From positions 1-22,206 of the forward strand of contig NW_021823647.1 of the NCBI RefSeq assembly GCF_006345805.1: a DNA stretch of 22,206 bases, given 5' to 3'. Positions 13,678 through 14,260 of this stretch are shown here, piece by piece. The first letter of the stretch is position 1, and each line of letters begins with the position of its first letter. Position numbers and translations under genes: made by a program. The notes under the pieces are model-generated. The model was not told the DNA's origin and did not search any database. It saw nothing but the letters and a program-made list of their open reading frames with translations. This stretch comes from Octopus sinensis. Taxonomy: Eukaryota.

Positions 13678-14260
13678 TTATTACACACATGTGAGTGAGA
13701 ACACTTTGAGATATTTTTGGTATCTAACATATGTCAGATACTGCGAGCGCTGCTTCTGATTGGTCAATCCATGGTGATGACCCGAGGTCACGGTGACGGC
13801 ACTACTTTTGTCATTCATAAGTTACAACTAAACTTCATTCATTACTTTCACGTGTGTTATGTATTTCTTGAACGTGAACTTGAATGTTAACAAAATGTTA
13901 AACAGTCATCAGTTATCAGTCATTTCACCTGAAAACTTAGCGCTATAAAGTCGGACTATCTTCCTGCGGCATGACATCTTTTACAGTTACACATTGTGAC
14001 GTCACTGACGTGAAATCAAGCTGTATTCATGCGCGCTTCAAACATGTGAAGAACTTAGTTATTGTGTTAATAAATATATGTCGTTTTATTCGTGTGTAAT
14101 AAATAAAATACCAAACTCATTCCCTATGGATACCGTATTTATTACAACGAGTGGCTTGTAAACGTATCTAACGAGCGAAAGCGAGTTAGATACGTTTACA
14201 AGCCACGAATTGTAATAAATACGGTATCCATAGGGAACTCGTTTGGTATTCTCTATTTAC
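13678..14260. mobile_element. ~580-bp non-autonomous element with terminal 144-bp hairpin (Crypton-like by inference)
   Basis: Interrupts LINE relic C between ...ALRKSQ and KEYFR. 11-bp inverted repeat TTATTACACAC (13678-13688)/GTGTGTAATAA (14092-14102), then hairpin 14107-14250. TTAC occurs at both junctions (13681-84, 14257-60). Confidence 0.7.
14107..14250. repeat. Long inverted repeat, 66-bp arms, GAGCGAAAGCGA centre
   Basis: 14107-14172 is the reverse complement of 14185-14250 except for two 3-nt mismatch patches. Confidence 0.97.

What the first reader, a model, noticed from the sequence alone, without database searches (positions are those of the whole stretch)
14107..14250. Patterned hairpin: GAAA tetraloop and three GA/GA-type bubbles built from one ACGAG motif
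The apex is C-GA-GC-GAAA-GC-GA-G, a GNRA loop under a tandem GA mismatch. The two mismatch patches are not random: both arms read ACGAG/ACGAA (14147-51, ~14204-08) or ACTCA/ACTCG (14115-19, ~14237-41) in direct orientation, giving GA/GA bubbles on one strand and on the other strand respectively. Asymmetric spacers within inverted arms resemble recombinase crossover sites or a selected ssDNA/RNA fold. A 66-bp stem would also be an ADAR or Dicer substrate if transcribed.
Basis: partly seen in the sequence, partly recalled or inferred. Interest (0 to 1): 0.8.

Follow-up and report, generated by a model that had tools for sequence, protein, structure and literature searches.

The report
Conserved 144-base DNA palindrome in octopus-like DNA
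A near-perfect 144-base palindrome in octopus-like non-coding DNA has a relative of identical build in another animal genome, with arms that changed together and two purine-purine mismatch sites that were kept, so it is a real conserved element, most likely a small mobile or recombining DNA module, and not a chance hairpin.

Summary
The hairpin is real. Its arms are 14107-14172 and 14185-14250 (66 nt, 60 Watson-Crick pairs) around a 12-nt centre GAGCGAAAGCGA. Either strand folds with z about -20. The six arm mismatches form two 3-nt blocks (p about 2e-5). Every interruption holds a tandem G.A/A.G in a CGAG frame. The window is octopod-like non-coding DNA.

A search with the translated hairpin found one relative, on an ENA contig from another eukaryote, probably a mollusc. 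It has the same 66+12+66 build, no indels and 74% identity. Of 60 stem pairs, 44 are unchanged, 13 changed on both sides and still pair, and 3 are broken. The inner and apical tandem G.A are identical; the outer bubble is not conserved.

There is no G.T in the stems, and 10 of the 13 double changes are transversions. This points to symmetry kept at the DNA level. About 430 nt on one side is also homologous, but in the opposite orientation to the hairpin's internal asymmetry (a flip).

Best reading: the palindromic module of a small non-coding MITE/foldback-like element whose arms are homogenised by recombination. An RNA hairpin gene and a hairpin-telomere relic remain rivals. Copy number, target-site duplication and expression could not be tested here.

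The parts
14107..14172 (+). Left arm of the palindrome (66 nt)
   Evidence: Inverted-repeat arm. It aligns without gaps to L001 10028-10093.
14173..14184 (+). Asymmetric 12-nt centre GAGCGAAAGCGA: tandem G.A (14173-74/14183-84), two G-C pairs, GAAA loop
   Evidence: 10 of 12 bases are identical in L001 (GAGCGAGAGAGA) in the +/+ orientation.
14185..14250 (+). Right arm of the palindrome (66 nt)
   Evidence: It aligns without gaps to L001 10106-10171.
14175..14182 (+). GCGAAAGC, identical to the 'extraordinarily stable mini-hairpin DNA' octamer; the only occurrence in the window
   Evidence: single occurrence. PMC13037366 gives Tm 76.5 C and a sheared G-A pair. Not conserved as such in L001 (GCGAGAGA).
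14148..14150 (+). Inner 3x3 loop, left side CGA (faces GAA at 14207-14209): C.A + tandem G.A/A.G
   Evidence: The tandem G.A/A.G is identical in L001 (10070-71/10128-29). The C.A is T.G there, so the ancestral state is inferred as CGAG opposite CGAG.
14207..14209 (+). Inner 3x3 loop, right side GAA
14117..14119 (+). Outer 3x3 loop, left side TCA (faces CTC at 14238-14240); on the - strand this is tandem G.A plus G.T
   Evidence: Not conserved: L001 has T-A, T.G, G-C here.
14238..14240 (+). Outer 3x3 loop, right side CTC. The right-arm hexamer ACTCGT is the reverse complement of L001's ACGAGT
   Evidence: direct reading.
14151..14172 (+). 5' strand of the 22-bp apical stem, the best-conserved helix (19 of 22 pairs unchanged; the apical 13 bp, pairs 54-66, are invariant)
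14185..14206 (+). 3' strand of the 22-bp apical stem
14092..14106 (+). Flank abutting the hairpin, GTGTGTAATAAATAA; 13 of 14 identical to the reverse complement of L001's right flank (10172-10186)
   Evidence: score 12 against at most 6 for the other three flank pairings.
13675..14091 (+). Region 'A': one-sided flank homologous to L001 10187-10491 in reverse complement. It holds ATTGG (CCAAT) at 13759, TGACCCGAGGTCA at 13778, TATAAAG at 13944 and TGACGTCA at 13997
   Evidence: BLAST 13675-13786 against 10491-10379: 66% over 116 nt, E 7e-7. Further patches of similarity appear in the MAFFT alignment.
13678..13688 (+). TTATTACACAC, an inverted repeat of 14092-14102 (GTGTGTAATAA) that brackets region A. 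L001 has TTTCTTACACAC / GTGTGTAAGAAA at the homologous places
   Evidence: The difference between the two loci is compensated.
14251..14260 (+). Weak outward extension of the palindrome (TATTTA 14254-59 pairs with TAAATA 14100-05)
   Evidence: All four flanks of the two copies read (A)AATAG/AATAA next to the arms.

Best explanation
The hairpin is one copy of a discrete, evolutionarily conserved DNA palindrome module, 66 + 12 + 66 nt. It sits at one end of a roughly 0.5-kb non-coding unit (region A plus the palindrome). The closest known kind is a foldback or all-TIR MITE-like non-autonomous element.

Shown: the module exists in two unrelated genomic contexts in two different genomes. It has sharp boundaries, exactly the same length and co-varying arms.

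Inferred mechanism: the symmetry is kept at the DNA level. The two arms recombine or convert against each other through snap-back or cruciform heteroduplexes. A substitution in one arm is therefore either erased or copied, as its Watson-Crick complement, into the other arm. A reciprocal exchange between the arms inverts the interior. That would explain why the asymmetric core is flipped relative to the homologous flank in the two loci.

The interruptions are ancestral places where both arms carry the same CGAG word in direct orientation. In any snap-back or heteroduplex these give tandem sheared G.A pairs on one strand and tandem C.T/T.C on the other. I infer they persist for one of two reasons: they are a directional recognition word for whatever protein acts on the element, or such mismatches are stable and poorly corrected.

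The GCGAAAGC/GNRA centre would nucleate snap-back of the + strand whenever the duplex opens.
For: - A second copy with the same architecture, no indels and 74% identity, and nothing else shared at BLAST word size 11 between 22 kb and 20 kb.
- 13 of 16 changed stem pairs changed on both sides and stayed Watson-Crick. 0 of 500 shuffles reach this, and slid controls give 0-1.
- There are no G.T pairs in the stem helices of either copy. The only two G.T cells are at bubble positions 12 and 42. 10 of the 13 double changes are transversion-type, which cannot pass through a wobble intermediate. This fits templated DNA copying better than RNA-level selection.
- Internal asymmetry matches +/+ at 14 of 18 columns, against 5 of 18 for +/-. 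The abutting 14 nt and a 116-nt block (E 7e-7) of flank match only +/-. This is an inversion of the palindrome interior or an equivalent event.
- The unit has a defined far end. In L001 the homology to a paralogous contig (L002) begins exactly at the far inverted repeat GTGTGTAAGAAA, and L002 lacks A and the palindrome. So the neighbourhood behaves as repeated, modular DNA.
- No coding capacity. No Rfam family reaches its threshold.
- Both loci lie in repeat-rich intergenic DNA.
Against: - No target-site duplication was found. The only candidate (TA at 14109-10/14247-48) lies inside sequence conserved in both copies.
- The centre (the apical 13 bp, pairs 54-66, plus the apex) is more conserved than the termini. 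This is the reverse of what transposase-bound TIRs usually show.
- Only one copy per sampled genome was seen: none in about 75 kb of additional held DNA. No autonomous partner is known.
- Arm-to-arm conversion should eventually erase the G.A sites, yet two are identical in both copies. So either selection or a repair bias must be added, and neither is shown.
- With only two sequences, 'flip' cannot be separated from loss of alternative arms of a longer palindrome, or from independent insertion of region A on either side.
Confidence: 0.45

Rival explanations
1. It is an RNA hairpin gene: a long miRNA-like or endo-siRNA precursor, possibly MITE-derived like mir-548. Drosha/Dicer would cut the 22-bp apical stem between the inner loop and the structured GNRA apex. 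Such a long duplex would also be an ADAR substrate in a cephalopod.
For: - The best-conserved helix is exactly 22 bp (pairs 45-66), bounded by the inner loop and the apical tandem G.A.
- A 15-nt block, GAGTTAGATACGTTT (14183-14197), and a 19-nt block, AAACGTATCTAACGAGCGA (14160-14178), are identical in both copies. The basal helix varies with compensation.
- The loop stays GNRA (GAAA to GAGA).
- The arms are 3 x 22 nt.
- Sub-threshold Rfam hits are all to long-hairpin miRNA families.
- Made1 MITEs give miR-548 in the same way (PMC1784062).
Against: - There are no G.U pairs in the stem helices, and 10 of 13 compensations are transversion-type.
- A 66-bp stem is about twice a canonical pri-miRNA stem.
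- No Rfam family reaches its gathering score (MIR2630 48 against 144 bits; mir-7386 25 against 44).
- The hairpin is inverted relative to the homologous promoter-like flank. If that flank drives transcription, the two loci would yield complementary RNAs, not the same RNA.
- Both strands fold equally well.
- No expression data were available.
Confidence: 0.2
2. It is a relic or non-autonomous derivative of a hairpin-ended single-stranded or linear DNA replicon: a parvovirus/densovirus-like rolling-hairpin telomere, or another element moved by an HUH nuclease or telomere resolvase. The imperfect palindrome would prime or resolve replication. The directly oriented CGAG words would give the nuclease its polarity.
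For: - The size (144-160 nt), the conserved mismatched purine 'bubble', the presence of both orientations relative to the inboard sequence (flip/flop-like), and an inboard promoter-like region with CCAAT, TATA and TGACGTCA / ACGT-N5-ACGT all recall parvoviral termini. For example, the MVM left-end GA/GAA bubble and PIF/ATF sites. That comparison rests on my own knowledge and was not tested.
- The apex is an exceptionally stable ssDNA mini-hairpin of the kind found at ssDNA phage origins (PMC13037366).
- The strict Watson-Crick, wobble-free arms suit a DNA hairpin.
Against: - There is no Rep/NS1, capsid or any other recognisable ORF. 10 ORFs scanned against Pfam gave only a sub-threshold MOSC hit with no homologue.
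- The shared unit is only about 0.5 kb.
- Both copies are embedded in chromosomal repeat-rich DNA on both sides.
- No match in IMG/VR, apart from one chance palindrome.
- The mini-hairpin octamer is not conserved in the second copy.
Confidence: 0.12
3. It is the first reader's recombinase crossover site: inverted binding arms around an asymmetric spacer that a site-specific recombinase cuts and inverts.
For: - The asymmetric 12-nt centre is flanked by 13 invariant bp on each side (pairs 54-66).
- The core is inverted relative to its flank between the two loci.
- The outer site differs between the copies by an in-place GA to TC flip (ACGAGT against ACTCGT).
Against: - No recombinase gene is present in 22 kb or in the 37-kb contig.
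- Inversion of a spacer between inverted arms needs only homologous recombination.
- Known core sites have 10-15-bp arms and 6-8-bp spacers (own knowledge).
- This overlaps with the best explanation rather than excluding it.
Confidence: 0.08
4. It is a neutral local accident: a recent inverted duplication or assembly artefact with a few multi-nucleotide mutations and no family or function.
For: Only one copy in the window. The flanks are AT-rich and microsatellite-rich.
Against: - There is an independent copy in another genome with identical architecture and conserved mismatches.
- The flanks are not palindromic, as they would be around a missed sequencing-adapter hairpin.
- The mismatches are clustered, p = 2e-5.
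Confidence: 0.03

Closest known systems
Made1-type all-TIR MITEs (human Hsmar1-derived Made1, source of mir-548)
   Same: A short non-coding element that is essentially two long inverted arms around a few unpaired bases (Made1: 37 + 6 + 37 bp). It forms a near-perfect hairpin if transcribed and is dispersed in the genome (PMC1784062).
   Different: This one is twice as long. No TA or other target-site duplication could be shown. The centre, not the termini, is best conserved. It keeps two non-Watson-Crick sites across genomes. It is attached on one side to about 430 nt of conserved sequence. No autonomous partner or copy number is known.
Foldback (FB-like) elements and long inverted repeats that evolve in concert
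   Same: The arms stay complementary while the sequence drifts (13 compensated pairs). The interior can invert by exchange between the arms.
   Different: Foldback arms are usually hundreds of bp built from subrepeats (own knowledge). Here the arms are 66 nt, unique in sequence, of fixed length, and carry conserved mismatches.
Parvovirus/densovirus terminal hairpins (e.g. the MVM left-end GA/GAA bubble; flip/flop forms)
   Same: A 120-160-nt imperfect palindrome, a conserved purine-purine bubble in which both arms read GA in the same direction, two orientations relative to inboard sequence, and inboard CRE/CCAAT/TATA-like motifs. The resemblance is recalled from knowledge and was not tested.
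   Different: There are no viral genes. It is not at a molecular end. It is a simple rod, not Y- or T-shaped. There are no tetranucleotide Rep-binding repeats beyond a GAGC-like apex. No hit in the viral contig collection.
Mini-hairpin DNA d(GCGAAAGC) (Hirao)
   Same: The window's apex is exactly this octamer, which forms a very stable ssDNA hairpin with a sheared G-A pair (PMC13037366).
   Different: Only the window copy has it. L001 reads GCGAGAGA, with the outer G-C pair lost. So the conserved feature is a purine-rich GNRA centre with flanking tandem G.A, not the octamer.
Tandem sheared G.A motifs in structured RNA (GNRA hairpins, loop E, k-turn stems)
   Same: 5'-GA/3'-AG tandems are among the few tandem mismatches that stabilise a helix (PMC2724281). 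Here they sit in the favourable C-GA-G frame under a GNRA loop.
   Different: Those motifs sit in short, strand-specific RNAs with G.U pairs and tertiary partners. Here one of the three sites is on the opposite strand, the stems lack wobble pairs, and no transcript is known.

Membership tests
MITE / all-TIR palindromic DNA transposon | Short (<~600 bp) and non-coding | tested here: met
   144 nt, or about 0.5 kb with region A. There are no ORFs with family hits.
MITE / all-TIR palindromic DNA transposon | Terminal inverted repeats | tested here: met
   66-nt arms, 91% complementary in the window and 89% in L001.
MITE / all-TIR palindromic DNA transposon | Target-site duplication flanking the TIRs | tested here: inconclusive
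   The only candidate is TA at 14109-10/14247-48. It lies inside the conserved palindrome: AATAC...GTATT plus AA/CT are identical in both copies. No direct repeat abuts the arms.
MITE / all-TIR palindromic DNA transposon | Many dispersed copies within one genome, with empty sites | not testable with these tools
   The collections hold almost no DNA of these hosts. The control with the window's own SINE gave 2 hits in 5.8 billion proteins. One copy was found in each of two genomes, and none in about 75 kb of further held DNA.
MITE / all-TIR palindromic DNA transposon | Termini are the most constrained part (transposase binding); an autonomous partner shares them | tested here: not met
   The outermost 5 bp are conserved, but the strongest conservation is at the centre: pairs 54-66 are invariant and the apex is 10 of 12 identical. 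No partner element is available.
Canonical animal miRNA precursor | About 33-35-bp stem flanked by single strands; match to a described family | tested here: not met
   The stem is 66 bp. All Rfam hits are far below their gathering scores.
Canonical animal miRNA precursor | One arm with a conserved seed; RNA-type covariation including G.U | tested here: inconclusive
   15-19-nt identical blocks lie next to the apex. But there are 0 G.U pairs in the stem helices, and 10 of 13 compensations are transversions.
Canonical animal miRNA precursor | Defined 21-23-nt products in small-RNA data | not testable with these tools
   No RNA data were available.
Parvovirus-type rolling-hairpin telomere | Imperfect terminal palindrome with conserved mismatches, present as flip and flop | tested here: inconclusive
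   The mismatches are conserved. The two copies have opposite orientation relative to the homologous flank. But n = 2, and other explanations exist.
Parvovirus-type rolling-hairpin telomere | Adjacent Rep/NS1 (HUH + SF3 helicase) and capsid genes; position at the end of a linear genome | tested here: not met
   No such ORFs. Chromosomal sequence lies on both sides.
Site-specific recombinase core site (lox/FRT-like) | Short inverted binding arms, a 6-8-bp asymmetric spacer and a cognate recombinase gene | tested here: not met
   The arms are 66 bp (13 invariant), the spacer is 12 nt, and no recombinase gene is present in the window or the 37-kb contig.
Mini-hairpin DNA GCG(N)NAGC | Exact GCGAAAGC/GCGNNAGC with two closing G-C pairs | tested here: inconclusive
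   Met in the window (14175-14182). Not met in L001 (GCGAGAGA).

The most novel reading that the evidence does not exclude
The palindrome is the terminal hairpin module of an undescribed class of animal mobile or episomal DNA that replicates or moves through a snap-back (rolling-hairpin, HUH-nuclease or resolvase-type) intermediate. Flip/flop inversion is part of its life cycle. The directly oriented CGAG words, which become sheared tandem G.A pairs in the folded strand, are the conserved polarity and recognition signal. It would be shared between cephalopods and other molluscs.
Probability: 0.1. Interest if true: 0.85.

Novelty: new variant of a known kind. Interest (0 to 1): 0.55.

Why it matters
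If the family is confirmed genome-wide, it gives a clean natural case in which a DNA palindrome drifts by a quarter of its sequence while keeping its exact length, strict Watson-Crick symmetry and two specific non-Watson-Crick sites. That would let one separate concerted evolution of inverted repeats, repair bias for sheared G.A and pyrimidine mismatches, and structural selection.

It may also define a molluscan mobile element, or a hairpin-RNA source, in cephalopods. These animals are known for heavy RNA editing and for miRNA innovation. If it turns out to be an ordinary MITE, the value is modest: a new repeat family for annotating octopus and mollusc genomes.

Tried and rejected
**Searches for more copies**
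- Exact and degenerate DNA scans for the arm, for an arm with N at the bubble, and for the apical stem found nothing. This covered viral contigs, metagenome contigs and genome contigs.
- A looser viral scan gave one chance phage palindrome, L005. The covariance model rejected it.
- The translated hairpin against the 5.8-billion-protein word-indexed database found nothing.
- Back-translated scans of metagenome and genome contigs found nothing.
- The control with the window's SINE ORF gave only 2 hits, one from Octopus bimaculoides. So these negatives say nothing about copy number.
- Exact look-ups of five window ORFs to find the source or allelic contigs: none on record.
- Only the index-free HMMER search worked.

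**Other leads**
- A sub-threshold MOSC hit on ORF 16863-17105(-) was followed as a possible exon to reach an orthologous gene. It has no homologue, so it is spurious.
- L002 was fetched as a possible allelic contig. It shares only a high-copy repeat, about 330 bp, with L001, and has no hairpin.
- P0014 (a cluster-mate of an L001 ORF) is an unrelated SMC protein.
- The rest of contig ctg82165 holds no further copy.

**Ideas rejected**
- Small in-place inversions as the origin of the window's two 3-nt blocks: each needs a 4-nt inversion plus a substitution, which is no more parsimonious than a 3-nt replacement.
- Sequencing-adapter or missed-SMRTbell artefact: the flanks are not palindromic.
- Helitron, Replitron (not found in animals), CRESS stem-loop, NUMT and hammerhead retrozyme: their defining features are absent (own knowledge).
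- The scan for bacterial promoters and terminators was not used, because it does not apply to a eukaryote.
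Full report
**1. The observation**

The sequence at 14107-14250 is a 144-nt palindrome. Its arms are 14107-14172 and 14185-14250, 66 nt each and 91% complementary, separated by 12 nt. The palindrome ends sharply at both sides.

As single-stranded DNA it folds at -63.0 kcal/mol (+ strand) and -63.1 (- strand). As RNA it folds at -99.0 and -101.4. z-scores run from -20 to -22, and none of 200 dinucleotide shuffles folds as well (include flanks).

The six non-complementary arm positions are exactly 14117-19 and 14148-50, with their partners at 14238-40 and 14207-09. 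Six random mismatches would fall into two runs of three with p = 2e-5.

Direct reading and the folds of both strands show the following:
- The inner loop is C.A plus tandem G.A/A.G on the + strand.
- The outer loop is tandem G.A/A.G plus G.T on the - strand. On the + strand it is pyrimidine-pyrimidine.
- The apex has a tandem G.A on the + strand.

All three interruptions are therefore places where both arms carry (C/T)GA(G/A) in the same direction instead of as complements.

AACGAG occurs six times in the whole window on both strands, and three of these are in the hairpin. GCGAAAGC occurs once, at the apex. That octamer is the 'extraordinarily stable mini-hairpin DNA' (Tm 76.5 C, sheared G-A pair; PMC13037366). 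5'-GA/3'-AG tandems are among the few stabilising tandem mismatches in RNA (PMC2724281).

**2. Context**

The window is eukaryotic non-coding DNA. It has dozens of microsatellites and SINE-like repeats, no tRNA genes and no credible coding ORF. A 5S rRNA-like sequence lies at 13303-13419 on the - strand.

A translated SINE ORF is 79% identical to an 'uncharacterized protein' of Octopus bimaculoides. So the source is an octopod or a close relative. There is no second copy of the hairpin in the window.

**3. Search for relatives**

Exact and degenerate DNA scans of the viral, metagenome and prokaryote-genome collections found nothing. Neither did a word-indexed protein search with the open frame that runs through the hairpin. 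The SINE control shows that these collections are nearly blind to this organism, so those negatives carry no weight.

The index-free HMMER search of 1.84 billion representatives with the translated hairpin gave one real hit, P0003 (46 aa, E 3e-7). Its gene lies on ENA assembly ERZ25071447, contig ctg82165, 36.9 kb (L001).

At L001 10028-10171 there is a palindrome with the same build. Its arms are 66 nt and 89% complementary, with 12 nt between them. It folds at -58.6 kcal/mol, z = -20.

The two hairpins align without a single gap at 106 of 144 identical positions. At BLAST word size 11, the only other similarity between the 22-kb window and the 20-kb locus is this hairpin aligned in the reverse orientation.

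L001 and a second contig of the same assembly (L002) carry minisatellites and a very abundant tRNA-like SINE of about 330 bp that is absent from the window. They lack the octopus SINE, and their CpG observed/expected ratio is 0.62-0.71 against 0.97 for the window. I infer a different animal, probably a non-cephalopod mollusc. This rests on my recollection of such repeats and was not tested.

**4. What the comparison shows**

Of the 60 Watson-Crick pairs in the window's arms:
- 44 are unchanged in L001.
- 13 differ on both sides and are still Watson-Crick.
- 3 are broken.

On the named structure, 96.8% of cells pair. Thirteen pairs carry double changes, against 6.5 +/- 1.9 in shuffles (0 of 500 reach 13) and 0-1 when the partners are slid. 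RNAalifold independently predicts the same rod, with 13 compensated pairs.

The inner tandem G.A/A.G (pairs 43-44) and the apical tandem G.A (pairs 67-68) have identical bases in both copies. The window's C.A at pair 42 is T.G in L001, so the ancestral state was CGAG facing CGAG.

The outer bubble is not conserved. L001 has T-A, T.G and G-C there, and its right arm reads ACGAGT where the window reads the reverse complement, ACTCGT. L001 has private mismatches at pairs 22, 24 and 53. Its apex is GAGCGAGAGAGA: the loop is GAGA, still GNRA, but one G-C pair is lost.

**5. DNA level or RNA level?**

Neither copy has a G.T pair in its helices. The only two G.T cells are at bubble positions. Ten of the 13 compensated pairs are transversion-type (A-T to T-A, C-G to G-C, and so on), which cannot pass through a wobble intermediate. 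Both strands fold equally well. This is what copying one arm from the other would give. It is unlike typical RNA covariation.

On the other hand, conservation is strongest at the centre. The apical 13 bp (pairs 54-66) are invariant, the 22-bp helix between the inner loop and the apex has 19 unchanged pairs, and the apex is 10 of 12 identical. The basal 28-bp helix carries 9 of the 13 compensations. That is the reverse of a transposase-bound TIR. It resembles an RNA or ssDNA hairpin with a functional tip, or a protein site on the dyad axis.

**6. The flank and the flip**

A more sensitive comparison shows that the window's left flank is homologous to L001's right flank in reverse complement:
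- 13675-13786 matches 10491-10379: 66% over 116 nt, E 7e-7.
- Further patches of similarity lie between that block and the hairpin.
- The 14 nt abutting the hairpin match: GTGTGTAATAAATA against GTGTGTAAGAAATA. This pairing scores 12, against at most 6 for the other three flank pairings.

The other flank shows no similarity.

Inside the hairpin, the 18 asymmetric columns match 14 of 18 in the +/+ orientation and 5 of 18 in +/-. So the asymmetric interior is inverted relative to the homologous flank. There are three possible explanations:
- Exchange between the arms, or a flip/flop process.
- Each locus kept a different arm of a longer palindrome.
- Region A inserted on either side of a symmetric target.

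Two copies cannot decide between these.

Region A is bracketed by an 11-12-nt inverted repeat whose difference between the two loci is compensated: TTATTACACAC/GTGTGTAATAA in the window against TTTCTTACACAC/GTGTGTAAGAAA in L001.

In L001, homology to the paralogous contig L002 starts exactly at the far repeat. L002 lacks region A and the palindrome. So the unit has defined ends and sits among repeated, modular DNA.

Region A holds promoter-like words: ATTGG at 13759, TGACCCGAGGTCA at 13778, TATAAAG at 13944, TGACGTCA at 13997 and ACGT-N5-ACGT at 13999. I did not test their function.

**7. Explanation**

I commit, at about 0.45, to a DNA-level reading. This is the palindromic module of a small non-coding element of the foldback or all-TIR MITE kind. 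Its arms are homogenised by arm-to-arm recombination or conversion, and the same process occasionally inverts the interior. The CGAG/CGAG sites are ancestral, directly oriented words. They survive because they are recognised, or because the sheared G.A and pyrimidine-pyrimidine heteroduplex mismatches are stable and poorly corrected.

Shown: the family exists, with fixed architecture, compensation, conserved G.A sites, absence of wobble pairs, and an opposite orientation to the flank.

Inferred: mobility, the conversion mechanism, and the reason the mismatches persist.

Rivals:
- An RNA hairpin gene, miRNA/siRNA-like (0.2).
- A relic or derivative of a hairpin-ended ssDNA or linear replicon (0.12).
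- A dedicated recombinase site (0.08).
- An accident (0.03).

**8. Comparison with known things**

No Rfam family is matched. Made1/mir-548 is the nearest described analogue in build (PMC1784062). However, no target-site duplication could be shown, copy number could not be tested, and the expected terminal conservation was not found.

Parvoviral telomeres share several features: size, a purine bubble with both arms reading GA, flip/flop, and an inboard promoter. The defining genes and the terminal position are absent, though.

I therefore file it as a new variant of a known kind (palindromic non-autonomous DNA element) and not as a member of any named family.

**9. Verdict**

This is a real, non-random and conserved element.

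Interest is moderate (0.55). The combination of exact length conservation, wobble-free compensation, conserved sheared-G.A sites and an inverted core is unusual. But an ordinary repeat family remains the most likely outcome once whole genomes are searched.

Noticed in passing
window 13303-13419 (-): A full-length 5S rRNA match (84.9 bits, model positions 1-120) about 690 nt from the hairpin. It has many C-to-T-type differences from a canonical 5S. Upstream is a partial duplicate of its own 5' end (GCTTACGGTTTTC). Downstream are a tRNA T-arm-like GGTGTAAGTTCGATTCTTGGTGG and a T5 run. It may be a pseudogene or a 5S-headed SINE.
   Followed up: partly
window 13489-13528: A perfect 14-bp hairpin (GACTAGGAAGATAC / GTATCTTCCTAGTC) with a 12-nt loop, about 70 nt upstream of the 5S-like start. 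Its spacer length is the same as in the large palindrome.
   Followed up: no
window 12130-12480 (+) and 18729-19085 (-): Two SINE-like dimers (periods 195 and 186 nt, 1.8-1.9 copies each) are 93-96% complementary to each other. They are much closer to each other than to the other SINE copies in the window. They bracket 6.3 kb that holds the 5S-like gene and the hairpin.
   Followed up: no
window 1560-2641: A tandem duplication with a period of about 505 bp and 96-99% identity.
   Followed up: no
window 14431-14471: A small hairpin (12-bp stem, 10-nt loop). Its start, CAAACTCCATTCCTATG, resembles the large hairpin's start, CAAACTCATTCCCTATG. Significance is marginal (10 of 300 shuffles score as high). 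It may be a degenerate relative or chance.
   Followed up: partly
window 13759-14013: Promoter-like words lie in the flank shared with L001: ATTGG (CCAAT) at 13759, the everted palindrome TGACCCGAGGTCA at 13778, TATAAAG at 13944, TGACGTCA at 13997 and ACGT-N5-ACGT at 13999. L001 has CCAAT at 10402 and two TACGTCAC words in the homologous stretch.
   Followed up: partly
window 13678-13688 / 14092-14102; L001 10175-10186 / 10478-10489: An 11-12-nt inverted repeat brackets the shared flank in both genomes. The difference between the two loci is compensated (TTATTAC/GTAATAA against TTTCTTAC/GTAAGAAA).
   Followed up: partly
L001 10477-11300 vs L002 3997-4879: An 86% identical paralogous segment whose first 54 nt are identical. 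It starts exactly at GTGTGTAAGAAA. In L002 it is preceded by a SINE with a (TTCC)n tail, not by region A plus the palindrome.
   Followed up: partly
L001 960-1912, 5044-6347, 7484-8216, 12864-13645; L002 throughout: The ENA contigs carry long minisatellite arrays (87-, 28-, 46- and 86-nt units). A tRNA-like SINE of about 330 bp is present about 25 times in 20 kb of L002. Spurious ORFs from it are what link the two contigs in the protein clusters.
   Followed up: partly
window 8094-8830, 4269-4722, 16097-16417: Very long (AT)n tracts of up to 737 nt drop local G+C to 15%. They are mutually complementary and generate most of the long 'inverted repeats' reported for the window.
   Followed up: no
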